This document shows, in pieces, positions 3,792-64,000 of a stretch of 64,000 bases of DNA (positions are counted from its first letter, which is position 1; every line of letters begins with the position of its first letter). Under the pieces are notes generated by a model. That model was given only the letters and a program-made list of their open reading frames with translations. It searched no databases and was not told the DNA's origin. The stretch is taken from contig NW_013657679.1 of NCBI RefSeq assembly GCF_000142905.1, positions 652,228 through 716,227 on the forward strand, read 5' to 3'. This DNA is from Thecamonas trahens ATCC 50062 (Eukaryota > Protista > Apusomonadida). Position numbers and translations under genes: made by a program.

Positions 3792-4214
3792 NNNNNNNNN
3801 NNNNNNNNNNNNNNNNNNNNNNNNNNNNNNNNNNNNNNNNNNNNNNNNNNNNNNNNNNNNNNNNNNNNNNNNNNNNNNNNNNNNNNNNNNNNNNNNNNNN
3901 NNNNNNNNNNNNNNNNNNNNNNNNNNNNNNNNNNNNNNNNNNNNNNNNNNNNNNNNNNNNNNNNNNNNNNNNNNNNNNNNNNNNNNNNNNNNNNNNNNNN
4001 NNNNNNNNNNNNNNNNNNNNNNNNNNNNNNNNNNNNNNNNNNNNNNNNNNNNNNNNNNNNNNNNNNNNNNNNNNNNNNNNNNNNNNNNNNNNNNNNNNNN
4101 NNNNNNNNNNNNNNNNNNNNNNNNNNNNNNNNNNNNNNNNNNNNNNNNNNNNNNNNNNNNNNNNNNNNNNNNNNNNNNNNNNNNNNNNNNNNNNNNNNNN
4201 NNNNNNNNNNNNNN
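3792..4214. other. assembly gap
   Basis: Run of N. Confidence 1.
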
Positions 4215-16739: not shown

Positions 16740-16978
16740 NNNNNNNNNNNNNNNNNNNNNNNNNNNNNNNNNNNNNNNNNNNNNNNNNNNNNNNNNNNNN
16801 NNNNNNNNNNNNNNNNNNNNNNNNNNNNNNNNNNNNNNNNNNNNNNNNNNNNNNNNNNNNNNNNNNNNNNNNNNNNNNNNNNNNNNNNNNNNNNNNNNNN
16901 NNNNNNNNNNNNNNNNNNNNNNNNNNNNNNNNNNNNNNNNNNNNNNNNNNNNNNNNNNNNNNNNNNNNNNNNNNNNNN
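16740..16978. other. assembly gap
   Basis: Run of N. Confidence 1.
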
Positions 16979-25301: not shown

Positions 25302-26202
25302 NNNNNNNNNNNNNNNNNNNNNNNNNNNNNNNNNNNNNNNNNNNNNNNNNNNNNNNNNNNNNNNNNNNNNNNNNNNNNNNNNNNNNNNNNNNNNNNNNNN
25401 NNNNNNNNNNNNNNNNNNNNNNNNNNNNNNNNNNNNNNNNNNNNNNNNNNNNNNNNNNNNNNNNNNNNNNNNNNNNNNNNNNNNNNNNNNNNNNNNNNNN
25501 NNNNNNNNNNNNNNNNNNNNNNNNNNNNNNNNNNNNNNNNNNNNNNNNNNNNNNNNNNNNNNNNNNNNNNNNNNNNNNNNNNNNNNNNNNNNNNNNNNNN
25601 NNNNNNNNNNNNNNNNNNNNNNNNNNNNNNNNNNNNNNNNNNNNNNNNNNNNNNNNNNNNNNNNNNNNNNNNNNNNNNNNNNNNNNNNNNNNNNNNNNNN
25701 NNNNNNNNNNNNNNNNNNNNNNNNNNNNNNNNNNNNNNNNNNNNNNNNNNNNNNNNNNNNNNNNNNNNNNNNNNNNNNNNNNNNNNNNNNNNNNNNNNNN
25801 NNNNNNNNNNNNNNNNNNNNNNNNNNNNNNNNNNNNNNNNNNNNNNNNNNNNNNNNNNNNNNNNNNNNNNNNNNNNNNNNNNNNNNNNNNNNNNNNNNNN
25901 NNNNNNNNNNNNNNNNNNNNNNNNNNNNNNNNNNNNNNNNNNNNNNNNNNNNNNNNNNNNNNNNNNNNNNNNNNNNNNNNNNNNNNNNNNNNNNNNNNNN
26001 NNNNNNNNNNNNNNNNNNNNNNNNNNNNNNNNNNNNNNNNNNNNNNNNNNNNNNNNNNNNNNNNNNNNNNNNNNNNNNNNNNNNNNNNNNNNNNNNNNNN
26101 NNNNNNNNNNNNNNNNNNNNNNNNNNNNNNNNNNNNNNNNNNNNNNNNNNNNNNNNNNNNNNNNNNNNNNNNNNNNNNNNNNNNNNNNNNNNNNNNNNNN
26201 NN
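25302..26202. other. assembly gap flanked by poly-G
   Basis: Run of N with G runs on both sides. Confidence 1.
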
Positions 26203-34277: not shown

Positions 34278-35047
34278 GGTCGGCCTTGACGAGTCGGGTG
34301 GTGTCGACCGAGTGCAGGGCAGACAGAGCTTCGGGAGTGCGACCGGGCTGGGGCTGGGCGGACCAGCGGGCGAAGCTTGCTCGGCCGTCTTGATCGTGGC
34401 AGCAGGATCAACGATCCCATGTGGCCGTAATGTCTCGTGCTGCCGAGCCGACTCTGTGCTGTACCGCATCTTGCGCATCGCCAGGGGAGGGCGAAGAAAG
34501 GACGCTCCGCATGGCCGGCTAATGCACGCGATCACATGCAGCTCTACCTCCCCCTCCTCCGACCACACTCACGTTGTTCCACCCTCCGCACTCGCATCAC
34601 ATACTCTCAGAGTATCGTCATCATCGGCAAGTGTTGGTCCATCTGGATCCCCATCGCCCGATTCAAAACGAGTGCCGAGAGGCATCAACGGCAGGGCGCG
34701 ACGAGTTTGGCAAAGACGGCCAGCGAGCGCACGACACTGCACGCCAAGCACAGGCGACCACACACTTTGGGTATGTACATGGTGATATACACATTTACCA
34801 CTGCTATGGTGCCCCGTCCCATGCTGTCGAGGTTGCAGGGTTGTGCGCGGTGGCGGCGGAGGTGGAGGGGGTGTCGGTGGCGGGGCCGTGTGGCGCCGAC
34901 GTCAAATTTTGGTTGGCCAACAGAGAGCGAGGCCGAGAAGCAGTCCAAGTGCAACAGCGACTGACACATGGGAGAGCGTGGTGGTCTGGGAGGGTGTAGG
35001 TACCGTGTGTGACGGTTGTAGCTCTGTGTCGCGTGTATTCTCAAAGT

Positions 35048-38000
35048 ATGGACGAGGATATTGACCTTTCGTTCGATGCCGGCCTCGATGATGTCGACAA
35101 CCTCATCGCAGACGTCGAGCTCTCCGACTCGGACCAGGTGCTAGATGACGTGGATCTCGACGATCTGGATGATCTCGGACTTGACGATGTCGATCTTGGT
35201 GGCGGCAGCGACGATCTCGGTCTGGGTGGCAGCGACGACCTTGGGCTGGGCGACAGCGACGACCTTGGGCTGGGCGACAGTGACGACCTTGGGCTGGGTG
35301 GTAGTGACGACCTGGGGCTGGGCGACAGCGATGATTTCGACCTTGGCGATGGGAGCGACGACTTTGATCTGGGCTCGGATGAGCCAGACGTTGGCGACGA
35401 TGACGAGTTTGCCGATCTCGATCTCGGTTCTGGCGACCTCGAGGTCGATGACGACGATGCCGAGATGGAGGCACTTCTTCGCGAGGCTGAGGCTGCTGTG
35501 GACCTTGACGATGCGGAGGAAGAAAGGAATTTGGAGCCAGAGCCTGTTGCCGATCCCGTGGCCGAAGTTGAGCCCGTGGCCGAGGTCGAGCCCGAGCCTG
35601 TGGCCGAGTCCGAGCCCGTGGCCGAGCCCGAGCCTGTGGCCGAGCCCGTGGCCGAAGTTGAGCCCGAGCCTGTGGCCGAGCCCGAGCCTGTGGCCGATCC
35701 CGAGCCTGTGGCCGATCCCGAGCCCGTGGCCGAGCCCGAGCCTGTGGCCGAGCCCGAGCCTGTGGCCGAGCCCGAGCCCGTGGCCGAGCCCGAGCCTGTG
35801 GCCGAAGTTGAGCCCATGGCCGAGCCCGAGCCCGTGGCCGAAGTTGAGCCCGTGGCCGAGCCCGAGCCTGTGGCCGAACCCGAGCCCGAGCCTGTGGCCG
35901 AACCCGAGCCTGAACCCGCAGTGTCTGCCAATGACTACGGTGTTGCGGACGTGGATGAGGCATTTGACGCTGATGCTAATCAAGAGTCTGATATGGTGGC
36001 TGATCCTGATCTCGATTCCATCGACCTCAACGAGCCCGCTGTTGGCAACAACGCCACATCCATCGACCTCGACGGCAACAATGCCGATCCCACCAACTTT
36101 GACATCCTTAACGATACCGAGCTCGATAGTGGCGCATCTGCAAAGTGCAACAACGAGACCCACCCCCCCATCACCGAAGACGATGGCGAGCTCGTGATTA
36201 ACTTGCCGCGCAACTCGTCGTCCGCCGACTCACTCGAGCTGGAGGCGGCAACGAGCCCGACTCTCGCGCCGTCAGCGTCCGAAACCGCGATCAACGAGGC
36301 TGCGGCTGCGGCGCTGGCCTCGTCGCCACCGCCCGACGCCATGCCCGACCTTGTCGAACTCAACGCCGAGCTGGACAACATTCTCTCACCGGAGCGTCAC
36401 GTCGACACGCCGTCGCGCGCTCGCCCCATCCGGCCCAAGCCAAAAACCACTTTTGTCGAGCTCCAGCCGCACCGCACCCTCTCCAAGGAGCAGTGGGAGG
36501 AGAAGGTTCGCCGTGACCGTGAGTTTGAAGAGACCAAGCGTATCAATCGCGAGGCACGCATCCAGGCCGAGCGTGATGCTATCGGCAAGGCGCCCGCCAT
36601 GAAGCGCACAGCCTCGGCGCGCAAGTACGAGGAGAAGCTCGCGCGCGAGTCGTTTTTGGAGCGGACGCAAAAGGCCGAGGCCCGTCGCCGCCGCCGACAG
36701 CAGGAACTCATCGCTGCCGCCGCCATCGAAGGCAAGCCGGTGCTCTCCTCCGGCACTCGTGCCATCCTGCAGCAGTCAGCCGACGAGCGCACGTTCCAGG
36801 ACCGTGTCCGCGACGCCGTCATTGCCCGTAAGGCCTCGCGCAACGCCCCGCCACCAGAGGTTGAGCCGCCCACCCCGGCTCTCTCCTCCGGCTCCAAGCG
36901 CATTCTCAAGCAGTCGACCTACGCGCGCCCGTTTATGGAGCGTCTCGAGGATGATCTCGAGCGCCGCAAGGCCCGCCAGGCAACGACCGAGGCCGCGCTT
37001 CCGAAGCCGCGTCCTCTTGTCCCGTCGGGCCGCCCATCCAAAGTCCCACGCAAGGGCCGCGCACCCATCTCGGAGCTGCCGTTTACTCAGCGGATGAAGC
37101 TTGCGCAGCAGCGCAAGGCCGAGCGCCTCCGTCGCATCAAGGAGGACGCCGACGCCGCGTGCACATTCAAGCCGAAAATCTCGTCCAAATCGAAGCGTCT
37201 CTCCAAGCTCAACACTCAAGACGTCCCGGTCTTTGAGCGCATGCAGATTGCGGCTGAAGAGCGAAAGCTCAAGCTGCTCGAAAACGAAGCCAAGGCCGAC
37301 GCGATCAAGCGCGCCGCCGAGCTCCTCGAGCTTCAGCAGTGCACCTTCAAGCCGAACATCACCGCCCACGCCGCGGCCATGGACTCGTCGTTTGAGCTCG
37401 GCGTCGACGCATACATCGCCAAACGCAACGAGGAGCGCGAGTGGGCCCGCCAGTTTGCGGAGCGCCAGTTCACCTTTCAGCCGCAGCTCGAGCGTGCTCG
37501 CCACGAGTACGACGCCACCCGCAACGTCGAGGCCGCCCACGACCACGCACATCACCACGCGTCGCCCAAAGGACTCTCCCCTCTTGCCCGCGGAAAGGGT
37601 GGGTCGTCGGCATCTGCCTCACCGGCGTCGAGCTGGAACATTGCCGGGGGCGCCTCGCCGTCAAAGCGCAGGCCCAGGCCTGCGCCTGCGGCTGCACGCC
37701 CTTCGCCGCGCAACAAGCGCCAGGCGCCACGTCAGGCTCGCCGCAACCCCGGCCTTGCCTCCACCCGTCGCCCGCCCAAGTCGGCCCAGCCCGGCCCTCG
37801 TGCCGAGCGTGCTTCCTCGCCGGGCATCGACGAGTCGGCGCTCTCGCTGCCGCCGCTCGACGAGTCGATGGGCGGGCCCGAGACCCAGGCGCCGCCGGCG
37901 TCAAAGGCGGCAACGCGGTTCAGCTCGGCTGGGTCTAGTGATGACACTCCTCCGCCTCAGACTGCCAAGCCTGTTGCCGCCCCGCCTGCCGACGGCGCCA

Positions 38001-41000
38001 TCCTCCGCAAGGCCTCCAAGCTCCGGACGAGGCCCTGGGTCTACCGCTATCCGTTGCAGTCGGGCGGGTGGGTTTTTGTCGACGCCGCAACGCTCAAGCA
38101 CTCGCGCCGCAAGCCCGGTCCGTCCGCCGTGGTTGTCCGGCGCGACGATGCAACTCGTGACGATCCGTATTGGCACGAGGCGTGGGATGCGGCCGCGGCT
38201 GCGCCGTTCTACGTCGATCCACTCTCTGGCGCCGAGCGCGAGAGCCGCCCAGACTCGTCGCGAATTGTCTCCATGCACCAGTACTACACCCTCAACCACG
38301 ACAAGAAGAAGGGCGCCAACTACTACTACAACCCGATCACCGGTCAGCTGTCGTGGAACACCCTTCCGCCGGGTGCGCGTCTCATCGACCCGGACACCCC
38401 AGTCTACTACGTGTACGAGGGCGAGCTCGGCTCCGAACACACCTACTTTGAGCCACTCAAGCAAGAGTCGAGCTGGAAGGCCCCGCCAGAGTCGGCGCTC
38501 TGCATTCCAGCTTCCCCCGACTGGCTCTTTGCCTACCCGTCGAAGAACAAGAAGAAGACGTTTTACTACAATCCAGTGACGATGAAGGCCACATCACGGA
38601 CACCCGAGGACGACGCGGTGGTCATCGCTGTTCCGCGCAAGCCACACAAGATCCACCGCGCGCCACCGGGTGTCGACAAGCCGTCACCGGACGCGTCGCC
38701 GGCTCCAGCTCCGCTTCCGTCGCCAGATGCATCGCCGGTTCCGCCGGCCAGTGCACCCGCCAGCCCGCCAATCAGCCCGCCGACGACCGCCACCAAGCGG
38801 ATCAAGCATCGGATGCGGGTCAAGACCAAGGTCTCGCCGTCGCCGGCCAAGCTCGCAAGCGCCAAGGCTGCCGCCGAGCTCGCCGCGCGCGAGCTGGCTG
38901 CCCGCGAGCCGAGCCCGCCGCCGCCGCCGCTTGACGCGCTGTACTACGCCTTTGACCTTGGCGACAAGACGCTGTACTTTAACCGCGAGCGCATGGCGTC
39001 GGCATACGCACTGCCGGACGACGCCACCGAGGTTGTGGAGGACATCACCTCAGAATGGTGGTTCGAGTACGAGTCGCATCCGCCGTCGACCGAGCTCTCG
39101 TTTGAGCACGGCGAGCCGGCCGACCTTGCGCCGCCGCTCAAGTTTTACTACAACCCGGTGACTGGCGAGCGCCGTGAGGAGCACCCGCCGCCGGGCACGA
39201 CCGTGGTCCTCGCTGACCACTCGCGGGTGGAGACGACTGTGTACGACATCGAGTACGAGGCCGCGGCCGCCCGACGTGCAGCTGAACAGTCGGCTATCGA
39301 GGCCGACCTCGCCGCGCACTGTCAGGACAACAACATGGCGCTCTCGCCGCTGCAGTCGGCCATTGATGCCGGCTACGCAGGATATGCCGCCGCCGCTGAC
39401 GCGCTCACGCGTGAGCTCGATGCGTCGTCGGCTGCGCGAGTCGCGTCGGTCGACGCCATCGTGCGCCGGTCGTCGCCAGCCGCCGCTGCAGCTGCTGGCG
39501 ATGACGGACTCTCGGCGCTTGAGCGCGAGATCAACGCGTCGGCGCGGGCGCGACTTTCGGCACTCCGCGAGCCCGCGCGCCACATAGGGGCTCTTGCGGG
39601 CCCGCGGGCGTTTGCACTCGACTCTCGCGAGGCGCTTGGAGCCGCAGTCACCTCGACCCGTTGGTTCTACCGCTTGCCCGATGCTGCGGCTCCGGGCTCG
39701 TTTGTCTTTGTCAACCCGTACACGCTCAACTCCGACACGTCTGCGGCTGTCTTCCGGGGCACCGAGCCGCCTGCCGCTCTCCGCGCCGCAGTTATCGATG
39801 TGACGCCGGCGCTTGCGGCGCGAGTCTTCTTTGAGTTGTGGGACGCATCGACCAAGGCGCCGATGTACATTGCTGGTGCGCGGCCGGACACGCTGCTGCC
39901 GGCGTCAGCCGTTGCTGCCTGTAATGCGCCGGTGGTCATCAACTGGCACACCTACGTCTACTCGGGCTACGACGACCTCTCGACGGCGGCGCTCTCATCG
40001 CTGTCGTTCTTTGAGCCGCTGACTGGCCGGCAGTTTGTGGGCCAGTCGGCGCAGCCTGCGTTTACCTGCTCTGTCGCCGACCATCCGAACGTGTGGTATG
40101 TGGTCCGGGATGGGCAACACCCGCAGTACTACAACCCGGTGCTTGGCCATTGCACTTGGCTGGCGCCGAGTGAGCCTGTCGACGATGCAACGCCGATTTT
40201 GGTCGAGCTCGGATCGCGCGAGGTGTGGTTCGAGTATGACATGTCGCTCGAGGCCGAGATCGGGCACGTCTTTGTGGCGCCGCTCGGGACCGGGCCGACC
40301 CGCTTTGCCTACGACAAACCGGCGGGCAGAGTCGAGTCCGACTCGCCGCCGGCCTCGCTCGACGCGCTCATGGCGACGCCGCTGGTCATTCCAGCACCGT
40401 CGGACAACTCGCCGGCATACTGGAGCGCCAAGCGGTCGGCGAGCTCGGCATTTTACAAGGCATCTGCTGCGAGTGGACGGCATTCGCCGTCGCGCCGCGC
40501 CGGGCCGAGCCCGACCGCGGCGTTTGTGTCGAGCGCAAGCTCGTGGTACGAGTATGCTGCGCCGGCCGGTGACGGGCGCACCATGTACTTTCAGCCGTGC
40601 TCAGGTGTGTGGTCGTGGGACGGTCCGCCGGTCGGTGGGCATGTCGTGCAAGAGTCGGACGCGTCGTGGTGGTTCGAGTACTCGGCGCGCGCCAGTGGGG
40701 CGACGGCAGTGTACTTTAATCCTGCGATGGTGGCCTGGGAGTCGGCGGTGCCGGCGTCGGCGACTGCGGTGGTTGATGCAGCGGGAAGTGTCGCGCACGC
40801 GCCCGGACGGGCACCTGCCACAGCCCGCGCGCCAGCAGCAGACAGCAAGCTTGAGGCCGAGTACGCGTCGTTTGCAGCCGAGCGCGAAGCGGCCCAGGCG
40901 GCACTCGAGGCCGAAATTGGCGCTGGCGTGGGTCGGCAGGGCACGGACGCGCTGGCGGCAGACCTCGATGCGATGACCGCGCACGACTCGGCGGCCAAGT

Positions 41001-42637
41001 CTGCGATCGAGTTGGAGCTCGACGCGATGCTGGCGGAGCAGCTGGGGAGCGGGGAGGTTGAGTTTGGCGGCGACGATGCGGCGACTCGCGAGCTCGAGCA
41101 GCAGCTCGACTCGGTGCTCTCGCAGCGAATGTCGGAGTTGAACGACCTCGACGCGTCAGCCGAGTCGCCGCACTCGGCGCCGCACCGGCGGATTGTGTTT
41201 TCGCCGGCGTCGCGGAGCCCGGTGCGGCGGGCGGCGCCGCCGCCGAGCACTGACAACGAGAATCTCGCGCGCAAGTTGGAGAACGAGCTCGCGGGTGATG
41301 GTGTGCCCGAGCCAGAGCCCGAGTATGAGTATGGATACGAGTACGAGTACGAGGAGGTGGAGGTGGAGGTGACACCGCCGACGCCGGCGCCGGCAGCGGC
41401 AGCTCCACAGCCGGACCCTGCGCTCGAGGTCACGGCCGCCGACCGGTACTCACCGGTACTGGCGGACCTCGACGAGTCGTCGGACGTCGACGACTCGCTG
41501 CTGGACCTGGAGTCGATGGTGACGCCGGGCGAGGCAGTCGAAGAGCCGCTGAAGAAGGACGCGCCTCGCGGCAAGGACGCGTTTGTGCTCTCGGACTCGG
41601 ACGACGACGGCATGGGCAAGGGCAAGGCTGGTGGTGAGAGTCAAGGCGACGACGATCTGCTCGATCTTGGCGACGACCATGACGACGAGGTGCTCGACCT
41701 CGAGGAAGAGTACCTCGATGTGGTGCCTGATGCTGCTGACGTGTTCGACGTGGATCATCAGCGTGATCTCGACGCGCCGCTGGATGCGGACGAAGAGCTC
41801 GACGCGCTTATTGACGACGACATCGACGCACTGCTTGCCGGCTCGGGCGATGACGACCTGGGCAGCGTTCCTCAGACACCGCGGGACAAGGGCAAAGACG
41901 AGGCCGACGACGAGGACGCCCTGCTCGACGAGGTGCTCGCGGCGGAGGTCGAGACGTCTGCAGTCTCAGACACGGTGCTCCTAGACGACGGCGACGGGCG
42001 GCTGTTGGACGAGCACGACCTCGATGCGCTACTCGACGACATCGAGCTTGACGACGCGGACGATGCGGTGCCGGGCGCTGGAGCGGACGCGGGCGACGAC
42101 GACCTGGCCGAGTTTATGGCGGCGGGCGTGCACGGGAACGCGTCGTTTGACGTGACGTCGTTCATGGCGGCAGCTGACGGCGGACGCAACAACTCGGGTG
42201 GTGCGCTCAAGGTGGAAGACCTCTCCGCGCAGGCACGGACGCCGCCGCGGTCACCGGGCTCGGCGCGCACGATCGAGAAGCTGCGGGCTGAGCGGACGCC
42301 GTCGCGGCGTGTTTCGTCGCCGGTCGCGGTGCTCTCGCCGTTCAAGCTCGATCCTCTGCCGGACTTTGAGTCGTCGCTCCTCGCGTCGTCGATGGGCGCG
42401 TCGGGGCATGCGTTCAAGGTCGGCGACGTCGTGTCTGTCCGTGGCGAGGAGGGCACGGTCCGGTACATCGGCGCCACCCACCGCCCGGGCATCTGGGTCG
42501 GCATCGAGCTCCACCAACCGGTAGGCTTTTCCAACGGCACCCTCCGCGGAGTCCACTACTTTGCCTGCCCTGATCGGTGCGGCAAGTTCTGCAAGCCGTC
42601 ATCGCTAACCCTTGTCCGCTCTGCTGATAACGGATGA
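35048..42637 (+). CDS. giant (~2530 aa) repeat-rich protein with C-terminal CAP-Gly domain
   Basis: Acidic repeats, PEPVAE repeats, CTFKP motifs and many WW/OCRE-like YY.NP.TG motifs. CAP-Gly: [34 protein letters not shown]...GKF. Confidence 0.88.
35207..35345 (+). repeat. 24-bp coding tandem repeat (SDDLGLG[G/D])
   Basis: About five copies of agcgacgaccttgggctgggcgac-like units. Confidence 0.85.
35533..35918 (+). repeat. 18-bp coding tandem repeat (EPVAEP)
   Basis: About 20 units of gagcc(c/t)gtggccgagccc. Confidence 0.9.
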
Positions 42638-43701: not shown

Positions 43702-46700
43702 ATGGCAGAGGACGACCCATGGCGGCAGTCCATGGGTATCCACTTTGAAGGACTGCATGTGACGACCATTGGCGTCGACGCGACGAACACGGTGGGAGCC
43801 TTTGGTACACTCAATGGAGTGTTTCTTCTTGATCTGGAAGACCTTACCTCGCCTACCACCGCCATTTCTTTCCGCAATCAGTATGATGTCCGCACGCTGC
43901 ATTGGAACAGAATTCAGAGCTCGCTGCTGGCATGTACCTCGAACGATAAGGTCTATGTTTGGGATGTGGCTCAGCTGGAGGAAGCCGATGGGGATACCCG
44001 CGTGCATACAGAGCTCTCAAAGCATGTGCGATCGGTCAACGATATCGAGTGGCAAGCTCAGTCGGCTCATGTCCTCGCCTCGTGTGCCTCAGATGCGTAC
44101 ATCTACATCTGGGACATCCGCGAGCCGTCGACCGAGAAGCGTGCCTTCACCTCGTACCGGACCGACCGGGCGGGCGTGTCGCAGCTGGCGTGGAACAGAC
44201 ACGACGGGAACATTCTCGCGTCGGCCCATGCCGGCTTTGTGCGCATCTGGGACATGCGCAATGAGTCGCTTCCTGTCGGGTCATCCGCGCGCACGAGTCG
44301 CAGATCTTCGGCATTGACTGGTCGTACAACGTGAGCTCGGAGCTTGTCACCTGCGCGCTCGACAAGCTCGTCAAGTTCTGGGACGTCAACAAGCCGGAGA
44401 ACTTTATCGACTACATTCAGAGCTCGTCGCCCATTCGCCGCGCAAAGTACACTCCGTTTGGTGGAGGCCTTGTCACCGCCTCCTCCTCCACCCACACCGA
44501 CCTCAAGCTCTGGTCGCGCGCCTCGCTCCGCTCGCCCTCGCACACCTTTGCTGCCACCTCTGTCCGCGGTCAGCCCACTGATTTTGTGTGGCGCTTCTCG
44601 CCCTACGACTCGTCCACCTACCAGCTGCTCTCGTGGTCGTCCGACTCGCAGCTCCGGCTGTGGGCCATTTCCGACGACGTGTTTGCCTCTGTCGGTCACA
44701 CCCCGAGCCGCCGCCCCCTCTCGCCGGCTGTGCGGCTCAATAAGCTGGCGGGTGTCGGTGCCGCAGGCGCGGCCGCTGCTGGCACGGGCGCGAGTGCGAC
44801 CAATGCCGCTGGCACAGGGACCAGCTCCAGCCCGGGCCTCGCGGTGCCTGTCGGCGGCATGTCCCCGTCAGCTGCGCCGTCGCCGCGCGATGTCGAGCTC
44901 GTGTCGCCCGGCTCGGAGGCATCATCGCCGCCGGCACTCGGCTCGCCGCCATCGGTTGCGCTCCGGGTTCCATCCAAGATGGCTGGCGGGGGTATGCGCT
45001 CGCCGGCGGCGTCGCCGATTTTCCGCGTCGACTCCGAGTCGCAGCTGACCACGCTCGAGCAAGAAGTGGTCTACCTCAAGCAGCACCCGGTCGACGGAGC
45101 CTCGCTCGACAGGGCCAACTACGGTGCCGGCCTCGTCTTCCTCACCTTTACCTCGCAAACAAGCTCGAGCGAGATCTCGCCGCCAAGCGCGCCGGCGACG
45201 CCCATCGAGCTCCGGGTCCGGCTCATGTTTCCGGTCTCGTATCCGGACAGGGCCCGACGCTCGAGTTTGTGCAGCGGTCGTTCTTCTCGGCGTCTTCATC
45301 GGCACGGTCGAGTGAGACGACGCCCGACGTCAAGATCAGGCTCAAGGAGCTGGTCGGCTCGCTCATCCAGATGCGCGAGCGCGAGTCGATGCCGTGTCTG
45401 CACGCCACCGTCACCGAGATTGCCACCCAGTTTGACTTGCTCTCCAAGGCCAAGGCCAACCATGCGCTGCACGACGGTGAGGGCGGGCTCGAGGCCGGCG
45501 GCCGGGGCCACACCGGCGGCAACGAGTCGATCTCAGTCGTCGCCGCCGAGTTTGTCTGTCCGCGGCTCGGCGGAGCGTACTTTGGTCCGCGCGGCACCAT
45601 TGTGTTCTGGAACTGCTTCAACCCGTCGCTCTTCCGCCTCTCCAATCCGGCGAACCAGCTTGGCGACGACGACGTCGAGCCCGAGTCGCCGACCTCGCCG
45701 ACCTCTGGTCGGGCCCGGGCCCAGCAGCCCGGTCGCGACGGCAGCCGGTCGGCCGAGACGTGCTGGCCGGCGATGTGGTCCGACCTCTCGCTCTCGCTCG
45801 AGCTCGAGCAGCAAGGCCGCGAGCTGCACGTCTCCGACACCGGCGGTGTGCTCGCCACCGACGTGCTCTCATCGATCCTCGAGTCGCGCCCGTCGCTCTC
45901 GGCCAAGGTCTCGCTCACCCGGGCCACCGGCCAGGCCAAGGTCCACCACAAGACCCGGGTGCGGCTGGCTTCTGCGGCGCGGTTCATTCTCGCCTCGCCG
46001 ACGCTTGCCGAGCAGTATGCGGTCGACGCATCGCGTGCCTCGCTCCCGGCACTGTGTCAGGCCAATGCCGGCGTGGCGGCCCGAGCCAAGCGGCGGGACC
46101 TGGTCCGGGTGTGGAAGCTGGCGGCGCAGATGCTGAGCGCGTACACGCCACGGGCGCTGGCCGGCGCGCTCTGCCGGCTGGGCAGCAGTGCGTCGGGCGT
46201 GCCGTGGGCAGTCCACCCGTTTGCGCGGGCCACGCTCGCGTCGCTCTTCGATCACTACGCGGGGCTTGGTGATGTGCAGACGCTCGCGGTCCTTTCTTGC
46301 GTGTTTGCCCAGGCCGATGCGGCGGCAGTCGCTGCCCACGCCGCTGTCGCAGCCCATCTCGGCGGCTCAGCCGCGCGCATGCCCCGCGACGCTCTGCTCT
46401 TTGTCGATGCTCCGCTCGAGGCCCGCGCCAATGCGTACCGGCTCGGCTACTGCCGGCTGCTTCATGCATGGGGCCTACTCAACAAGCGTGCTGAGGTCGC
46501 CAAGTTTGTGACTCTGGCGGCCCAGGTTGCGCCGTTTAGCTCGAGCGTCATGCTCGCCAACACCTGCCCGCATGATCCGGTCGTCGTCTCGGCCGCGCCA
46601 CAGTGCTTTGCCTGTCCGCAGTCGCACTTTATGCTCGAGTGCGGAGTGTGCCGCCGCGGCATGCGCGGTCTCGCCTCGGCCTGCCTCAAGTGCGGTCATG

Positions 46701-55774: not shown

Positions 55775-58700
55775 ATGCGTTGTGGAGGGCGTGGTTATAC
55801 AAGACGTTCTTTGCCCTTGTATCGGGTGCTTTGTGGTGCTGTCCTGGTGGCTGTCTTGGCCTTGGCGGTGCCAGCATGGGGAGTGACAATCAACGTGGCT
55901 CCAAGTGGTCAAGTGATCTCCATTGTCGTGGCGGTTAGCGGGGCGGCCAACGGTGACGTAGTGGCGATTCCTGCTGGAACATGGCGTGGGTGCCAAGTCC
56001 CGATTACTGGGCGCGGGGATGGTGCGGCTGTGACGCTGGCTGGCGCCGGTGCCGGAGTGACGATCATCGACTGCGAGCACTCGAGCCACCGTGCGTTCTC
56101 GTTCCCGACATCTGGATTTTCAGCGAAGTTTGTCATCGAGGATCTGACGGTCCGGGGCGGCGGCTCGCTGACCAATGCCAACTACTCGAGCGGCGGCTGC
56201 ATGCTTGTTGGCGCTAGCTCTGATGTGACGCTTCAACGAGTGGTCGTCGAGTCTTGCTCGCTGGTCGGAACCGATTTTGCCACCTACCGAGGTGGCGCCA
56301 TCCGGGTCCAGTCGTCGGGACAGCTCACGCTGATCGACACGATAGTCCGGGATTCGACAGCATCGAAGGGAGGATGTGTGTATTACTCTGGTTCAAAGCG
56401 AGCCAAGATGGACGGCACCACCATTACTGGGTGTGTTGCCAGCGGCGATGGAGGCGGAGTGTTTGCGACCATCGACCACCATTTTGTCATCAACGGGAGT
56501 GGCCTCGAGGTGCGTGACAACTACGCGGGTGGGTCTGGAGGCGGTCTGTACATCGTCGGCGAAACGGAAGTGTCCCAGTCAGCGATGCTCAATGTGAGCA
56601 ACAATGTGGCAGAGGTCCGTGGCGGTGGCGTGTGTGTTTCTGGCGATGATGTGTCGGGCACGTTCAACGCCGGAGTCATTGCTGGCAACTCGGCCGGCGT
56701 GTGTGGTGGAGGCATGGCCTGGTGGGGCGAGGCCGAGGTTGAAATCCGCGATATGCTTGTTTCCGACAACTCTGCGGTCGCCGGCGGTGGATTGTGCCTC
56801 GATGATTCTGGAAGCGGGCTGTCTGGGACTTTGGTTGAGGGCGTCACCATCACCAACAACGTGGCAGCCACAACTGGCGGTGGGGTTTACATCAAGTCTG
56901 GCGAGTTTACCTTTGACGACACGCAGCTGCTTTCAAACACTGCAGTTTCTGGATCGGGAGTCTTTGTCGAGAGCGGTGCCGAGCCTGAGATCACCAACTC
57001 GTTTGTGTCTGGCAACCTTGCGCTCGAGGGCGGCGCGTTCGAAACAAGCGGATCGAATGGCACAATCGGTGTGTCCAACACAGTCGTCTGCTCTAACATT
57101 GGTGTCCTGGTGCACAACTCGGATGTGCGCTGTGGCGGTGGCTCCCGCTTTGACAACGCGATGGACGGCGGATGTGCTTCGAACACGTTTTGCAAACGGA
57201 GCGCGACTGCTTGCACGTACGCCGGAGGAGCACCAGCCAGCTGTTCTGGAGGGTGCGCGCCGGGATACAGCGGCGTGCGCTGTGATGTGTTGGTGGATTG
57301 CGAGACTGTGGCAGCCAACGGCTCGTGTTCTAGCTGCGCGTCGGGATTCATGAAGAGCACCGTACCTGGTCCGAGTTTTGGGAGCTGTCTGACTGCTCCA
57401 AGCGTGCATTCTCCGCCGCCACCACGGCCGCCGCCACCAAGCCCGCCTATGCCGCCGAGCCCCTCGCCTCCTCCTCCGCCACCCTCGCCGATCTCGTCTC
57501 CACCGCCAAGTCCTCCGCCACCATCGGCAGAGTCCAAGCTCCCAGATCCGATCTCGTGGTCGCTTACCCCGTCCGTCTCGCCGTATGCTGGTGGGGTGGA
57601 GATGACTCTGCGGCGAACAAGAGCAACATCAGCGGTGCCTGCGTTTGAAGTCGGCGCAAGATACGCCATGACTATGCCTGTCTTTGCCGCGCCTGTGGAT
57701 GACGCGCCAGTTACGACGGCGTCGATCGTGGCGCAGGCCATCGACGCCAACACGCTCAAGTTTACCTCGGTGGCGTCGAACAAGACCATGTATCATCCGC
57801 TGGAGCTGTTTGTGGGAAGCAGAAGCGTCCAGCTTGCCAAGCTCATTACCTATGTCGAGCATCAGTGTTACGACGAGGGCTTTGTATGGTACGGCTCGCG
57901 GTGCCGGTCGTGCAGCGAGTTTGATGGCGCGTTCTGCCCGGGGGGCACGCGGTTTTGGCCGCTTGCAGGCTACTGGTCGCCGGGTGAGGGCGTGCCACCG
58001 ACACGATGCCAGGTCCCTGCAGCGTGTCCCGGCGCGTTGGGTGAGCGTGACAAGTATCCGCCGCGCATGGACGTGACAGGGCAGCGGATCACGGCGCAGT
58101 GCGCGACGGGCTTCTCGGGCGAGTTTTGCTCCACATGCGCAACCAACTACTACAAGGAGTATGGCGTTTGCCGCGCGTGCGGAGCCGATGACACTGTGCG
58201 GACAGAGGTGACACTGATGCTCTTGGTGGCCTCTGTCTACTTTTTGGTGGTCCTTGTGGCGCTGTTTGTGCTCTCGGCGAGAAGCCTGGTGTTGATCGTG
58301 TCCGTGCTCGTTGTCCTCCAGCAGGTAGTGACCGTGTGCAAGGTCGGCTTGCAGCACCTCTCGACGTCACTCTCGTCACCGGTCTTTCCCACCATTGTGC
58401 GGGTGCTCTCGATCATCAACTTTGAAGTCGAGGTGGTGAAACCAGGGTGCACCGTTGGCGCGCTCTCGTTCACCAGTCTCTACTACGGCACGATTGGCCT
58501 CATCTGCTTTGCGGGACTTTGCTTCATTGGTGTGGTTTGGCTGCGGACCCACTCGTGCCTCGCCGCTAGCCGCGTCTCGCATCTCAGCGTTGTGCTCCCG
58601 TCAGTAAGCTCTGGCTCTAGCTCGGTGTCGACGACTTCAGAGGACGAAGAGCAAGAGTCCAAGGACGGAGAGCGCTCGGCATCAGGCAAGGACACGAGGC

Positions 58701-60690
58701 CGCGCCGGCATCGTGGCAATCTACAGACTCGAGCGCCGGGCTATGCCCGCAAGCGGGGAATCAGTCAGGAAGAATGATGATTCATTGAAGCGGCTGGCGT
58801 GTAGTCGCTACTCCTTGGCTCTCACTCTCACGCCAGTACCCATCTCGGGTCGTCGCTCAATACGACAGCTCTGCTCGACGCGAGGACTCGAGCGCCGGGC
58901 TATGCCCGCAAGCGGGGAATCAGTCAGGAAGAATGATGATTCATTGAAGCGGCTGGCGTGTAGTCGAGTGCCGCACCGCCGCGGCGTTGACACGCTGAGA
59001 GACGCGCCGAGCGGCGAGCACATGCACTCTACTGCGTCCGGGTGGGAGACGGCAGCTTGCGGCTCAACGCCGAGCTCCGGGTGGTGTGCTATGAGGGTGA
59101 GCATGTGAGCGTGGCGGCTCTCGCCTGGGTGGTTTTGGTCACGATCTGCTGCGGCTTTCCAGTTTGGATGTTCTTTACCGGCATCAGCATGTTCCGAGCG
59201 CTGCGGGCGTTCAACATGATGGTCATCGACATGGCGTTCGAGTCGTACGGCTTTCTCCTTCACGGCCTCAAGCCGCCGTTCTTTTGGTTCCGCGCGCTGC
59301 AGTTTGTCTCGACCTTTGCGTTTGTGACCGAGACTGTTCTTCTGGAGCGGACCGGGACGCGGTTCTTTGCCACCATCATCAACTTTGCCGTAACCATGCT
59401 GCTGGTGGCTCTGCTGAATCCGTTCCGCTCGCAGCTGCAGACAACGCTGTCGATTACTGCAGGTCTGGCATCGTCAGGTCAGCTTATGTACTTTTTGTAT
59501 GAGGAAGACTTGCGTTTGTTTGGTATTTCGGTCATTCTCCAGGTGTTGTTCGTGGTTGCATGCCTTGGCTTGCTCACACTGCACCTTGCCCGGAGGCGGA
59601 GGCGCGACATGGTCAAACCTGAGGAGTACGGCGTGGCGAAACAGGCATTGTCGTCATCGTCATCGTCATCGTCGTCATCGCCATCATCGTCATCATTATC
59701 GTCATCGTCGTCGTCATCGTCATCGTCGTCATCGCCAGCAACGGCGGTGTCGACAAAGCCCGATCGCTCGGTTGCCAAGTCGTTCAGTACATCCAAGGTA
59801 TTGCCGCAACTCCCTGCGGTCGTCGCAGCTGGCTCGGCGCCCGTAGCGTCATCGGTCGAGATGGAGACTACGAGCGGCGAGATTGGAAAGCATGCGTTGT
59901 CGTTTTCAAGCAGCGACTCTCTGTTTGACGTGCTGTCGACGCCTCGTGTTGACTCGACACCGGTCGCGACGTCGGACACAAAGGTCCGAGGCAAGACAAT
60001 AGTCGACACGGTCGCGGCAGTCACAGCCGCACAAGACGCGGCAACAGCAGTCATCGGCGGCGAGGCCACCAGGCGGACCAGGCACGCAAGGCGATCCATT
60101 CGGCTCCTTTGCGCCTTGACCGATCCCAATCGCACGGGCAACTGGGGGAAGCGCCTGGTCACAAGCCACGGAGCCTGCGAGCAGTGGCGGCGTCGAAAGC
60201 AGCGGAGCTGCTGCCATGTGAGAATCTGCCCATGGCCAGCTTCTCGACTCGCAAGGGCGATGTGGCCGAGGACATCACCAGTCCGGTGGCGTCGCGGAGC
60301 AGGTCGCGGAACCGATCCTCGCGGCGGTCACGACACAAGCCGCGCGTGCCAGATACCCGCTGTGGCAGCGGTGGTTCACACCCGGACCGGCGCCGGCGCC
60401 GGCGGACACATCGTGAAGGCAGCCGGCACCGACAGTCCCGGTTGGCCTCGCCGGAGTCGGTGGACGAGTTGACGGCGAGTGGACTGGAGAGCGGAACGAG
60501 CCCGACTGGCAGTCCGCGGTTTGCTGATAATGTCAGCCCTCGGATGTCGACTGGCCGGCGGGTTTCTCGTTCGAGCACCATGCCGGACGGTGTCTCGCCG
60601 CGGTCCAGGCTGGTTGGGTCGCCCAAGCTAAGGAAGGTCACTGGACATGGGGAGCGGCTGCGGCCGAAGCCAGATATGCTTGATCATTGA
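55775..60690 (+). CDS. large cell-surface protein (signal peptide, pectin-lyase-like beta-helix, EGF-like, Pro linker, IPT-like, Cys-rich, multi-TM domain, Ser/Arg tail); interrupted at ~58720-59020, probable frameshift ~60070
   Basis: GGA/GGG..N repeats, CAPGYSGVRC, CPGG..WP..GYW..C..P.AC, C..GFSG.FC..C..NYY. TM domain with C..GDG.L......CY..H and YGFL..LK..F.W. ORFs 55775..58777 and 59042..60472 are in the same frame. Confidence 0.8.
58726..58807 (+). repeat. 82-bp direct repeat, copy 1 (potential structured RNA)
   Basis: gactcgagcgccgggctatgcccgcaagcggggaatcagtcaggaagaatgatgattcattgaagcggctggcgtgtagtcg, identical to 58885..58966. Confidence 0.97.
58885..58966 (+). repeat. 82-bp direct repeat, copy 2
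   Basis: Identical to 58726..58807; period 159 bp; unique 77-bp spacer at 58808..58884. Confidence 0.97.
59651..59735 (+). repeat. (TCR)n poly-Ser coding tract
   Basis: tcgtcatcgtcatcg... Confidence 0.9.
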
Positions 60691-60915
60691 ATTGCGTTGG
60701 TTGTGGCGTGCGTGGTGTTGATCTCACAGATGTTGGTAGGGGGGTGTTAGATGGGCAGGAGAGGGGAACGGCCTGGTCCATGGTTTGGCAGGTTGACTGG
60801 CGTCGTGGCACAGCGACCGACGAGAGGGGGCGGGCGAGAGCAACGCAAGACTTGAGTACTTGGCTGTGACCAGACCACCACAACGGAGTGAAGCAGGCCT
60901 GGAGTACAAAGGAAC

Positions 60916-63185
60916 ATGCGGCTGACACTACGTCATGGCGTGGTAGCCTTCATTGCGGTCGCGCTTGTCCACAACCTGGCGAGTATGTACTTGGCTCGCG
61001 GGCCTAGGACGACCAGCCCGCCGACATGGGCATCTGGCGCAGGCGGCGGACCAGCCAGGGGCAAGGGTGACGGAAGAACAGCAGGACTATTGCCGTCGCC
61101 ATTGCCTCCACCCCCACTGCCACCGTCGCGGCCACGACCACGACCACTGCCACCGCCGTCGTCGCCGCCTTTGCCGCCGCCGCCGACGCCACCGTCGCCG
61201 CCGCCACCACCGTCACCACCGCCGCCGGCCAGGCGTCTTGATTCAAGATATCCTGGGGCTGCGACACATCCCGAGGCAAATCCACAGGGCGTGGGGCCGT
61301 ACGAGCTGGAGCCACAGTCCGGACCGGCGCACGCTGTGCCGCCGCCAGAGCAGCTGATGTCTGACCCACCGGCCGAGTCGCGCAAGCCAGGGTGGATGGC
61401 GGTGTGCGAGAGCGTGTGCGCCGGCGACGCGGAGCCGCCAATAGTGCCGAAATCGCATGACGACAACAGTCAGCTCGCGGGAACATGCTGGAGTACAACG
61501 GATGGGGTTCGCAGGCCTGTAGCGCGGCCATCGGCGGCTGAGGCGTGGCAGTCGCGGTGGAAGTGCCGGGGCGGCTCAGTGTTCAACCGGACGTGCCTTT
61601 TTGAGAACGTATGCCTCGATCACAGCTACCCAAGCCGAGACCGGTTCGGGATGCGGTTTGTTGCGTTTGTACCGGATGATGTGCTGGCGACCATCCCGAC
61701 TCACCCGTGTCTGATCGGACAGGAGAAGCCGGGAGACACGAGATTGCCGTGCGTGTCTGTTGATGCGTTTCTCCTCCCCACAACCCGCCGCTCGAGGTTG
61801 TGGTCCTGCCTGCATCGGATGCGCCGGATCCTGAAAAGGTGACGTGGTACGGCAGTGAGAACGAGACCTCGCTTCTGTTTGACACGTTTCAGCCGCATGT
61901 GCACGGGCACGCGATATTTGATGGGCTCTACTCAGTATATTCTTTGGCAGTTGGCCATGGGCTCCAAACGGCGTCATCGCCCCCCGGGCTCGACAAAGAG
62001 CATATTCGGCTCGTTTCGGCGCTACCGCGGGCACGACATGTGGGCAAGTTTGAGGACAATATGGCGGCGCCAGTTCTCAACGAAGCGTGGCCACTGTTCA
62101 CATCCAGTCCAATGATGGACCCGGATATTCTCGCGGCAGAGGCAGGCACGTCTCAGTACACGTGTTTCCCGGCGCTTGCGACCGGGCTCGGTGGGCGGTC
62201 GTACTGGAGCAACGATCGGTGGTGCAATATTTCGCCACGGCAATCGCCAGAGCTAGATCACCCGGCACGGTGCGACCAGTCGATCCACGACGGATTTGTC
62301 GGGTTCCTCCGCGGCGTGAGTGATACAACACCGGCCGAGGTGGCAGAGAAGGCGGCGAAACGGCGGCGAGACGGCGGGGTGCTCAACGTGGTCATTGTCA
62401 ACAGGCTCAACAACCGCAAGTTTGTCAACATCGGGGCCATCGAAGCCGAGCTCAACGCCGCGTACAACAAGAGCGTCAATATCCAAGTGGTGGCGTTTGA
62501 GCGACTCTCAATTGCTGAGCAGGCAATGGTGTGCGAAGAGGCGGATATCTATGTGGCCTATGCCGGGTCGTCACTGGCCAACACGGTGTTTCTCCCGCCA
62601 CATTCGGTGGTGATCATCATCTCTTCACTCTTCTACGAGACGGCAGCGTGTGGGTTTGACCGCCTGATCACGGACCTTGGGCACTACAACATCTCGTACA
62701 TCGAACGGCGTGCGCAGTTTGTTGATCCACGCCCACAGAGCCCAGAGCTCTACACTGAGGTTGTGCGGTGGTTTGCGCACGAGCAGGCGGTGTATGGGGC
62801 TTGGCAAAAGAGCGAGCCAAGCACAAAGAGGCTAGGCGACTACCGGGCGTACTCGCTGGTGCTCGAGAGCGATCGGATCAAGGCCATGATTGACGCCGGA
62901 AGCGCACTGGTTCGCGGCAAGTACCCCGGAGCGCCAACGCCAGGCATGTGGGCAGCGGAGCCTCTGCGGTACTGGAACACGGAGATGTGGCGCAAGACGA
63001 CGGACCGATTTGATTACGGCGAGTCGCTTGGTGGAGTGGTGCACATCCCGCCTAACGACGAGGACGAGCTTGCACGGCCGCTGCACGAGGCGTGGGGCCC
63101 GTACTTTGCACAGATGCGACGGCCAGACGGGATCCGGTCCCACATGGAGCCGCGGTACGAGTTCTGTGCGTGCGATGCAAAGTAG
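60916..63185 (+). CDS. GT61-family glycosyltransferase (EOGT/POMGNT2-like), type II membrane; apparent frameshift ~61768-61779
   Basis: N-terminal TM and Pro stalk, CLFENVCL, HVHGHAIFD, IVNR..NRKFVN, FERLSIAEQ..EADIYVAYAGSSLANTVFLPP.SVVI. Confidence 0.8.
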
Positions 63186-64000
63186 TTGTGCAAATGGCGT
63201 AGATGCGGTGCGCAGCGGTGGACTCGTTGATGGGCCCGGGAGGAGAGGTCAGCAGCACCTTCGAAGGGACACCGGGCCAACAGCTTGAGCCTGAGCCGGC
63301 AGAACTCGGATTCTGGAATACTGCAGCTGTGGATTGGACATTGTGCAAGGGCGTAGTGTGTATATGTAGTACGGCAGTAATGAAATCCAATTGGCCATAT
63401 CTTGCAATGAGTGTGATGGGGGTTGTGTGCGGGGTCGAGACGTCGAGGACGTGCTCAACCACCTAGGGGGAAAACAAGTCGACACGGAAATGAGCCGAGG
63501 TGGATGGATATCGATGATGGCGATATTGGTACTGATGCTAGTGTGGGGCGAGTGATGACCGTGGGTGTGGTCGCGGGATGCGTAGCTAGTAGTGGGAAGG
63601 AGCTGGGTGGTGATGAAGGTGGGCTGATCGGGCAAGCGTGCGACGGCTGGCAGCTGGTGGTCGACGAGGCAGAGGCAGCTGAGGAGGCGGGGTCAGGGCT
63701 GGGTGGCTCGAGATTGGTATTGGTTGGTGGATGGGCAGTAAGGCATGTGATGGTTGACGGATGGCGGTGTCGGGGTCGGGCGAGAGGATGGGGGTGAGTT
63801 GGAGGAGAGGAGGAGGAGGACGAGGAGGAAGAGGAAGCGGAGTGCGCGATGGGATGGTGGTGAGGATGGCCAAGGCAAGGTGGTTGTGATTGTAGCTAGG
63901 ATGATAGTGATGGTAGTGGGGTAGGGGGTGGGGGTGGTCGTTTGTGGTGACGGGTGGTAATGAGTATGGTAGGGGGGGATGAGGGGGTCGTCACGTGGGT

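What the first reader, a model, noticed from the sequence alone, without database searches (positions are those of the whole stretch)
58720..59020. Repeat-spacer-repeat cassette: two identical 82-bp repeats around a unique 77-bp spacer, inside a gene
Seen: 58726..58807 and 58885..58966 are identical (period 159 bp). They are separated by a unique spacer and followed by ~54 bp of further non-coding-like sequence. This is the only long, exact, high-complexity duplication I noticed in the window. It puts in-frame stops (TGA TGA at 58775-58780, TGA at 58988) into an otherwise long ORF. I see no transposase, no TG..CA LTR ends, no TIR/TSD and no Cas gene. Inference: a minimal array (guide-like unit flanked by processing scaffolds), a small terminal-direct-repeat or retrozyme-like element able to yield a 159-nt unit or circular RNA, or a recombination cassette. 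Mis-assembly or foreign sequence is also possible.
Basis: partly seen in the sequence, partly recalled or inferred. Interest (0 to 1): 0.88.

Follow-up and report, generated by a model that had tools for sequence, protein, structure and literature searches.

The report
LTR fragments patched into a gene
The "repeat-spacer-repeat cassette" is two fragments of a 162-bp retrotransposon LTR that overwrite two stretches of a chromosome-end membrane-protein gene in Thecamonas trahens; the "spacer" is leftover gene sequence, so this is a repair scar or assembly oddity and not a new RNA system.

Summary
The 82-nt exact duplication is real. It is not a guide array, retrozyme or intron.

- **What the repeat is.** Both copies are antisense fragments of a 162-bp Ty3/gypsy-type LTR (TGTGCT...AGCACA). 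Three full copies exist elsewhere in the genome: one directly 3' of a pol gene, and one solo with a 4-bp target duplication. The window holds LTR[57-138] (58726-58807) and LTR[1-145] (58878-59022).
- **What the "spacer" is.** It is retained host coding sequence, in frame.
- **Host gene.** Thecamonas trahens AMSG_00324 region, one of at least 84 paralogs, 5 kb from the contig end. It lacks a transmembrane helix conserved in its paralogs.
- **Other data sets.** Contigs from an estuary metagenome, a related organism and a 2020 data set of the same organism carry ordinary coding sequence instead: 78 and 148 letters where the window has 75 and 145. No contig in the four runs laid supports the window's junctions.
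- **Best reading (about 0.6).** A real, allele- or stock-specific repair scar made by microhomology-mediated copying of retrotransposon cDNA. One junction sits exactly at the LTR's first base.
- **Rival (about 0.25).** An artefact of the draft assembly.
- **Unexplained.** The replacement preserves length, and this recurs on contig C128.

Interest is low to moderate.

The parts
55775..58725 (+). 5' part of the host gene: beta-helix/EGF-like ectodomain, proline-rich stalk and first transmembrane helices. It is part of NCBI model AMSG_00324.
   Evidence: ORF list; weak NosD/beta-helix Pfam hit; at least 84 paralogs in the genome; 100% match to P0002 AMSG_00324.
58726..58807 (-). Patch 1: LTR positions 57-138 (LTR sense is the window's minus strand). 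It stands where other data sets have 78 letters of coding sequence. Its ends share GAC and GTCG with the host.
   Evidence: Identical to LTR copy C39:3007-3168 over 82/82; alignment; X1 contig skips 58729-58803 and carries 78 other letters.
58808..58877 (+).
   Evidence: Contigs of X1 and X9 align to 58804-58878 between host-type sequence on both sides. Unique in the assembly. Weak similarity to the SLNTTQLL stretch of the C6 paralog (shuffle p about 0.08).
58878..59022 (-). Patch 2: LTR positions 1-145. It ends exactly at the LTR's first base (TGTGCT = reverse complement of 59017-59022). It stands where other data sets have 148 letters that encode the conserved transmembrane helix.
   Evidence: 145/145 identical to the C39 LTR; terminus pattern; X1 and X9 contigs carry 148 other letters; the X3 loose end reads YLQISLRTMQ; the helix is present in paralogs.
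59023..59023 (+). A single T that belongs neither to the LTR nor to the uninterrupted allele (filler nucleotide at the junction).
   Evidence: LTR homology stops at 59022; host-type contigs resume at 59024.
59024..60472 (+). 3' part of the host gene, with the remaining transmembrane helices. UniRef names the C6 paralog (P0001) 'TRP C-terminal domain'. Same frame as the 5' part.
63229..64000 (-). Context: a copy of the 1.45-kb subtelomeric repeat. The window ends at the end of contig C1, so the host gene lies about 5 kb from a chromosome end.
   Evidence: 83-86% match to the tandem units at C39:1-2997; contig C1 is 716227 bases long, which is the window's end; a motif of this repeat lies near many contig ends.

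Best explanation
**What it is (shown).** The cassette is two antisense fragments of the 162-bp LTR of a young, low-copy Ty3/gypsy-type retrotransposon of Thecamonas trahens. The fragments are LTR[57-138] and LTR[1-145]. They overwrite two stretches (78 and 148 nt in other data sets) of a subtelomeric multi-pass membrane-protein gene. About 70 nt of host coding sequence remains between them; this is the 'spacer'. The gene loses a conserved transmembrane helix and gains seven in-frame stops, so this copy is broken.

**How it arose (inferred).** This was not integrase-mediated insertion, because there is no full LTR and no target duplication. More likely, during repair of a break or gap near the chromosome end, DNA synthesis of the window's + strand switched twice onto retrotransposon cDNA by microhomology (GAC, GTCG, A). 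The first excursion copied LTR 138 to 57 and returned to the host. The second copied LTR 145 to 1 and ran off the 5' end of the donor's plus strand, which is exactly LTR base 1. One untemplated T was added and synthesis rejoined the host.

**Status.** The allele is specific to the sequenced DNA. Uninterrupted copies exist in the same species and its relatives.
For: **The repeat is an LTR.**
- Three full 162-bp copies differ by only 1-3 nt. All start TGTGCT and end AGCACA.
- The C39 copy lies directly 3' of a pol ORF (RNase H, integrase), after a purine-rich tract.
- In the C53 copy the domain order is protease, RT, RNase H, integrase.
- The solo copy C53:11329-11490 is flanked by AGGA on both sides.

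**The sequence was replaced, not inserted.**
- Contigs of X1 (estuary metagenome) and X9 (organism B) carry 78 and 148 other letters in place of the patches, and align to the spacer.
- X3 (organism A, 0 mismatches over 577 bp) shows YLQISLRTMQ just before 59024.
- Paralogs on C6, C14 and C44 have this helix in a continuous ORF.

**Junctions.**
- Microhomology is only 0-4 nt. One junction falls at LTR base 1 plus 1 nt.

**LTR fragments are real elsewhere in this lineage.**
- The C53 fragment inside RT has its 'LTR end | TTCATTG' junction also in the independent X1 metagenome.

**Precedent.** In yeast, retrotransposon cDNA is captured at breaks, and the 3' LTR is a hotspot (PMC11372161; PMC4516963).
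Against: - No contig of the four runs laid bridges any of the window's four LTR/host junctions. The one run of the same organism that covers the 59024 junction shows the uninterrupted form.
- The uninterrupted segments are absent from the assembly.
- The assembly is a gapped draft: N runs lie in and near the retroelement copies.
- The near-exact preservation of length (75 for 78, 145 for 148) is not predicted by ordinary end joining or template switching.
Confidence: 0.6

Rival explanations
1. Artefact of the draft assembly or of the sequenced library: the true genome has only the uninterrupted gene, and LTR sequence was written over two stretches during assembly, gap closure or consensus building.
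For: - X3 (same organism), X1 and X9 all show the uninterrupted form, and none of the four laid runs supports the junctions.
- The uninterrupted 30-mers are nowhere in the assembly.
- The length-preserving replacement looks like something done in alignment coordinates. It recurs in the small, gap-ridden contig C128.
Against: - Overlap or k-mer assemblers join at tens of shared bases, not at 0-4 nt. So the four junctions would have to exist in reads.
- One junction sits exactly at the biological end of the LTR.
- The region is gap-free for kilobases.
- A comparable LTR-fragment junction inside RT is confirmed in an independent metagenome.
Confidence: 0.25
2. Ordinary integrase-mediated insertion of the retrotransposon or of a solo LTR into the gene, later reduced by deletions and a partial duplication.
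For: The element is mobile in this genome: a solo LTR has a 4-bp target duplication. One LTR terminus is intact in the window.
Against: - No target duplication, and the other LTR end is missing.
- Host sequence sits between two overlapping LTR fragments of the same orientation. A simple tandem duplication would give A-S-A-S, not A-S-A-tail.
- Host sequence is lost at both patches.
- At least four separate events would be needed.
Confidence: 0.08
3. A spliceosomal intron, as in the NCBI model AMSG_00324, which skips 58600-59055 (GT..AG).
For: The public gene model jumps from 58599 to 59056. GT and AG are present at those borders.
Against: - The skipped stretch includes host coding sequence that is continuous ORF in paralogs and in other data sets. 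This includes a conserved transmembrane helix.
- An RNA-library contig (X15) reads straight through the proposed donor, covering 58465-58726.
- The same model goes on to fuse an unrelated GT61 glycosyltransferase gene. It looks like a device to avoid stops.
Confidence: 0.03
4. One reading: a minimal guide array, retrozyme or circular-RNA unit, with 82-nt processing scaffolds around a 77-nt guide.
For: Only the repeat-unique-repeat geometry.
Against: - The spacer is host coding sequence.
- The repeats are LTR fragments.
- No Rfam match, and no excess folding energy.
- No other locus has the repeat pair around a different spacer.
Confidence: 0.01

Closest known systems
Capture or copying of LTR-retrotransposon cDNA at chromosomal breaks. 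Known for yeast Ty1 (Teng et al. 1996 and Moore & Haber 1996, from my own knowledge; PMC11372161) and for mouse zygotes (PMC4516963).
   Same: - Short LTR-derived inserts, with the LTR a preferred source.
- No target duplication, and loss of target bases.
- 0-4 nt microhomology.
- A donor end coinciding with a cDNA end, plus an extra nucleotide.
- Complex multi-piece events occur.
   Different: - Here two pieces from the same donor flank retained host sequence.
- Each piece replaces a host stretch of almost the same length, which those studies do not describe.
- Nothing here is experimental.
Microhomology-mediated template switching during replication or break-induced repair (FoSTeS/MMBIR; from my own knowledge).
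   Same: Serial switches between templates at microhomologies; a chromosome-end location; same-orientation segments copied from one ectopic donor.
   Different: The donor appears to be a linear retroelement cDNA, because copying runs off at LTR base 1, rather than nearby chromosomal DNA. The length-preserving return to the original template is not a described feature.
Solo LTRs of Ty3/gypsy (Metaviridae) elements.
   Same: The sequence is that of the element's LTR. A true solo LTR of the family, with a 4-bp target duplication, exists at C53:11329-11490.
   Different: The window's pieces are truncated (82 and 145 of 162 nt). They lack a target duplication and replace host DNA.

Membership tests
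LTR of a Ty3/gypsy-type retrotransposon (identity of the repeated sequence) | Terminal TG...CA with short inverted ends | tested here: met
   All three full copies run TGTGCT...AGCACA over 162 bp.
LTR of a Ty3/gypsy-type retrotransposon (identity of the repeated sequence) | Lies directly 3' of pol after a purine-rich tract; pol domain order is protease-RT-RNase H-integrase | tested here: met
   C39 copy: pol stop, purine-rich tract, then the LTR. Domain order in the C53 copy.
LTR of a Ty3/gypsy-type retrotransposon (identity of the repeated sequence) | The same repeat at both ends of one element, with a primer-binding site after the 5' copy | tested here: inconclusive
   No element with both LTRs is visible. 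The 5' parts of the C39 and C53 copies run into N stretches or rearrangements.
LTR of a Ty3/gypsy-type retrotransposon (identity of the repeated sequence) | Target-site duplication at integrated copies | tested here: met
   The solo LTR on C53 is flanked by AGGA | AGGA.
Integrase-mediated insertion at the window's locus | Complete LTR ends and a target-site duplication | tested here: not met
   The pieces are LTR[57-138] and LTR[1-145]. There is no duplication, and host bases are lost.
Repair-mediated capture or copying of retroelement cDNA | Empty (uninterrupted) site in relatives; junction microhomology; target loss; donor end at a cDNA terminus | tested here: met
   Uninterrupted form in X1, X9 and X3. 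Microhomologies GAC, GTCG and A. LTR base 1 plus 1 nt at 59022/59023.
Repair-mediated capture or copying of retroelement cDNA | The junctions exist in the organism's DNA | not testable with these tools
CRISPR-like or other repeat-spacer guide array | Several repeats with differing non-host spacers; a structured repeat | tested here: not met
   Two repeats only. The spacer is host coding sequence. Folding is no better than shuffles.
Retrozyme / hammerhead-bearing element | A hammerhead or other self-cleaving motif in the direct repeats | tested here: not met
   No Rfam family matches at E<=10 in 58000-59800 on either strand.
Spliceosomal intron / introner | Removed from mRNA; absent sequence is non-coding in homologs | tested here: not met
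   Paralogs and other data sets code through the region. The X15 RNA-library contig crosses the proposed donor unspliced. Only about 7 copies or fragments exist genome-wide.

The most novel reading that the evidence does not exclude
The length-preserving replacement is a real biological signature. It is seen three times: 75 for 78 nt, 145 for 148 nt, and on C128 an anchor-to-anchor spacing of 93 nt against 94-96 nt in ordinary subtelomeric units. Under this reading, single-strand gaps at chromosome ends are filled by copying abundant retrotransposon cDNA instead of the sister strand. The intact opposite strand acts as a ruler, so the wrong patch has the length of the gap. This would be an undescribed error mode of gap or break repair, one that writes LTR 'patches' in register into subtelomeric genes.
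Probability: 0.2. Interest if true: 0.6.

Novelty: new member of a known kind. Interest (0 to 1): 0.3.

Why it matters
Mostly as a correction.
- A striking repeat-spacer-repeat pattern turns out to be retrotransposon LTR debris in a broken or mis-assembled copy of a large surface-protein gene family.
- The public gene model AMSG_00324 hides it behind an artificial intron and a gene fusion.

If the allele is real, it is a clean natural example in an apusomonad of repair synthesis borrowing retroelement cDNA at a chromosome end. The repeated length-preserving replacement would then deserve a look by people who study template switching.

Tried and rejected
**Readings tested and rejected**
- Rfam scan of 58000-59800: only chance-level hits.
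- RNA folding of the 152-nt unit on both strands: z = -0.6 and -1.0.
- Introner or small-TE idea: rejected once the pol gene and the LTR termini were seen.
- Simple tandem duplication: rejected on geometry. The cassette is A-S-A-tail, and the first patch replaces unrelated host sequence.
- Cryptic similarity between the overwritten host segments and the LTR: none, with alignment scores no better than shuffles.
- Paralog support for the spacer being host sequence: only weak (p about 0.08). The read evidence carries that point.

**Attempts to recover the full uninterrupted allele (all failed)**
- Two protein searches with the C-terminal part found only the C6 paralog or nothing.
- The 30-mers from loose ends are absent from the assembly.
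- Two JGI metagenome scans found nothing; records of this genome may be excluded there.

**Other limits**
- I could not compare the RT region overwritten on C53 with the C39 copy, because that stretch reads N.

Full report
**1. The observation**

Window 58726-58807 and 58885-58966 are identical over 82 nt, 159 nt apart. In the frame of the flanking ORFs I count seven stops between 58775 and 58990. The ORFs 55775-58777 and 59042-60472 share one frame. The 77-nt interval is unique in the assembly.

**2. Where we are**

The genome (28.7 Mb, 131 contigs, about 63% G+C) is the public Thecamonas trahens ATCC 50062 assembly.
- The closest paralog's protein is AMSG_11660, on a 631277-base contig. That is the length of contig C6.
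- The window's own gene is part of AMSG_00324, on a 716227-base contig. That is the length of contig C1.
- The window ends at the end of C1. Its last 770 bases are a copy of a 1.45-kb repeat that sits near many contig ends. The gene is therefore about 5 kb from a chromosome end.

**3. The host gene**

It belongs to a family of at least 84 paralogs. Members have a beta-helix-like ectodomain, a proline-rich stalk and a multi-pass membrane domain; UniRef names the paralog 'TRP C-terminal domain'.

The closest paralogs, on C6, C14 and C44, have continuous ORFs. Just before the motif C-[VI]-[RK]-[VA]-G-D-G they carry a conserved helix of the type RSRSKHAI.IL.AL.YLQLSLR. The window's gene lacks this helix. 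The second repeat copy and its tail stand in its place.

**4. What the repeat is**

The unit shared with other loci is 58878-59022 (145 nt), not just the 82 nt. Aligning all copies on the window's minus strand defines a 162-bp element that starts TGTGCT and ends AGCACA.

Full copies:
- C39:3007-3168
- C53:11329-11490
- C53:38447-38608

These differ from one another by 1-3 nt.

The C39 copy lies directly downstream of a long ORF with RT-associated RNase H and integrase domains, after a purine-rich tract. In the C53 element the domain order is protease, RT, RNase H, integrase, which is the Ty3/gypsy order. The copy at C53:11329-11490 stands alone between cellular genes and is flanked by AGGA on both sides, as a solo LTR with a 4-bp target duplication would be.

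So the repeat is an LTR. No element with both LTRs and a primer-binding site is visible, because the 5' parts run into N stretches.

**5. Anatomy of the cassette**

In LTR coordinates the window holds LTR[57-138] (58807 down to 58726) and LTR[1-145] (59022 down to 58878). Both are antisense to the gene and both are identical to the C39 copy. The LTR's last 17 nt are absent. There is no target duplication.

**6. The 'spacer' is host sequence, and the patches replace host sequence**

Public contigs were laid on 58200-59600.
- A 1045-base contig of an estuary metagenome (X1) matches 58641-58728. It then has 78 other letters, matches 58804-58878, has 148 other letters, and matches 59024-59600.
- A contig of a related organism (X9) shows the same 148-letter form.
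- A contig of the same organism (X3, no mismatch over 577 bases) has, just before 59024, letters that translate to YLQISLRTMQ. That is the missing helix.
- The X9 letters before 58804 are in frame without stops.
- These letters are unrelated to the LTR and absent from the assembly.

The uninterrupted form is therefore ancestral. It exists in the same species, and the window's form is derived. That is now shown.

**7. Junctions**

- Patch 1 shares GAC on its left and GTCG on its right with the host.
- Patch 2 shares one A on its left.
- On its right, patch 2 ends exactly at LTR base 1, followed by a single T (59023) that belongs to neither partner.

**8. Mechanism**

An integrase event is excluded by the truncated ends, the missing duplication and the lost host bases. 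A simple tandem duplication is excluded by geometry.

The most economical model is repair synthesis of the + strand that twice switched by microhomology onto retroelement cDNA.
- The first excursion copied LTR 138 to 57 and returned to the host.
- The second copied LTR 145 to 1 and ran off the 5' end of the donor's plus strand. In a reverse-transcription product, that end is exactly LTR base 1. One untemplated base was added before rejoining the host.

This accounts for the common orientation, the overlapping donor segments, the retained host piece and the exact terminus. It is inference.

There is precedent. Capture of Ty1 cDNA at breaks in yeast has the 3' LTR as a hotspot and carries extra cDNA-only nucleotides (PMC11372161). 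Retrotransposon capture at breaks is also reported in mouse zygotes (PMC4516963).

**9. The unexplained feature**

Both patches are almost exactly as long as what they replace: 75 for 78 and 145 for 148, each 3 nt shorter.

On contig C128, LTR[8-84] likewise stands in place of an internal segment of a subtelomeric unit. The anchors there are 93 nt apart, against 94, 94 and 96 nt in ordinary units.

A fourth fragment, LTR[about 92-162] at C53:40777-40847, sits inside the RT coding region and keeps the frame, although RT sequence is lost there. Its right-hand junction is also present in the independent X1 metagenome. So at least that patch is real in nature.

Length preservation is not expected from end joining. 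It could mean that a gap was filled while the opposite strand held the ends at a fixed distance. It could also point to an artefact.

**10. Real or artefact?**

*For an artefact.* None of the four laid runs supports the window's junctions. The same species' run X3 shows the uninterrupted form at 59024. The assembly is a gapped draft.

*For a real allele.* Assemblers do not create joins at 0-4 shared bases, so the junctions must have been in reads. One junction coincides with the biological end of the LTR. LTR fragments occur elsewhere and are confirmed independently.

I put a real event at about 0.6 (an allele, a duplicated chromosome end, or a stock-specific mutation) and an artefact at about 0.25.

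**11. The public annotation**

AMSG_00324 jumps from 58599 to 59056 (GT..AG) and then runs on into the neighbouring GT61 glycosyltransferase gene. The skipped stretch contains conserved coding sequence. An RNA-library contig (X15) crosses the proposed donor unspliced. I regard the intron and the fusion as modelling devices.

**12. Verdict**

Its leading interpretations (guide array, retrozyme, circular RNA) are not supported: there is no Rfam match, no excess structure, and the spacer is host sequence. The feature is a retrotransposon-LTR scar in a subtelomeric gene, of a known general kind, with one odd and unexplained property.

Noticed in passing
window 55910-63182: NCBI model AMSG_00324 (1483 aa) joins the membrane-protein gene to the downstream GT61 glycosyltransferase gene through several predicted introns. 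One of these (58600-59055) hides the cassette. It is probably a chimeric gene model.
   Followed up: partly
L033 (contig C128) 4100-4323: A 77-nt LTR fragment (LTR 8-84) replaces, in register, an internal segment of a 1.45-kb subtelomeric repeat unit. The rest of C128 is 98-100% identical to C39:1681-2920.
   Followed up: partly
L011 7278-7348 (C53:40777-40847): A 71-nt LTR fragment (3' part, ending exactly at ...AGCACA) sits inside the RT coding region of the rearranged gypsy copy. It keeps the reading frame but removes part of RT. The same junction is seen in an estuary metagenome contig.
   Followed up: partly
L007 3177-3217 (C39) and more than 30 contig ends; also window 63957-63991: A 36-41-nt purine-rich motif just upstream of the gypsy 3' LTR is also part of every 1.45-kb subtelomeric repeat unit. 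This hints that the subtelomeric repeat and the retroelement are related. An earlier scan note, s1-743456, proposes a TRIM-like array.
   Followed up: no
L012 4940-5120 (C53: about 44940-45120): Interstitial run of telomere-like repeats (TTAGGG/TTGGGG variants) about 45 kb from the contig start, next to an N stretch and G/T-rich sequence.
   Followed up: no
L011 5110 versus L007 3169-3712: The C53 gypsy copy lacks 544 bp of the pol 3' end and the purine-rich tract. Its 3' LTR is joined directly to integrase coding sequence and is followed by a poly-G run.
   Followed up: no
L007 7106-8305 (C39): An intact actin gene lies immediately beside the gypsy remnant, about 7-8 kb from the contig end.
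   Followed up: no
window 35534-35912: Imperfect tandem repeats (about 90-nt period, 77-85% identity) inside the 2542-aa ORF 35009-42637.
   Followed up: no
window 3792-4214, 16740-16978, 25302-26202: Runs of N in the window. Together with similar runs inside the retroelement copies, they look like scaffold gaps of a draft assembly (or withheld stretches). The dip to 41% G+C at 24-26 kb is partly due to one of them.
   Followed up: no
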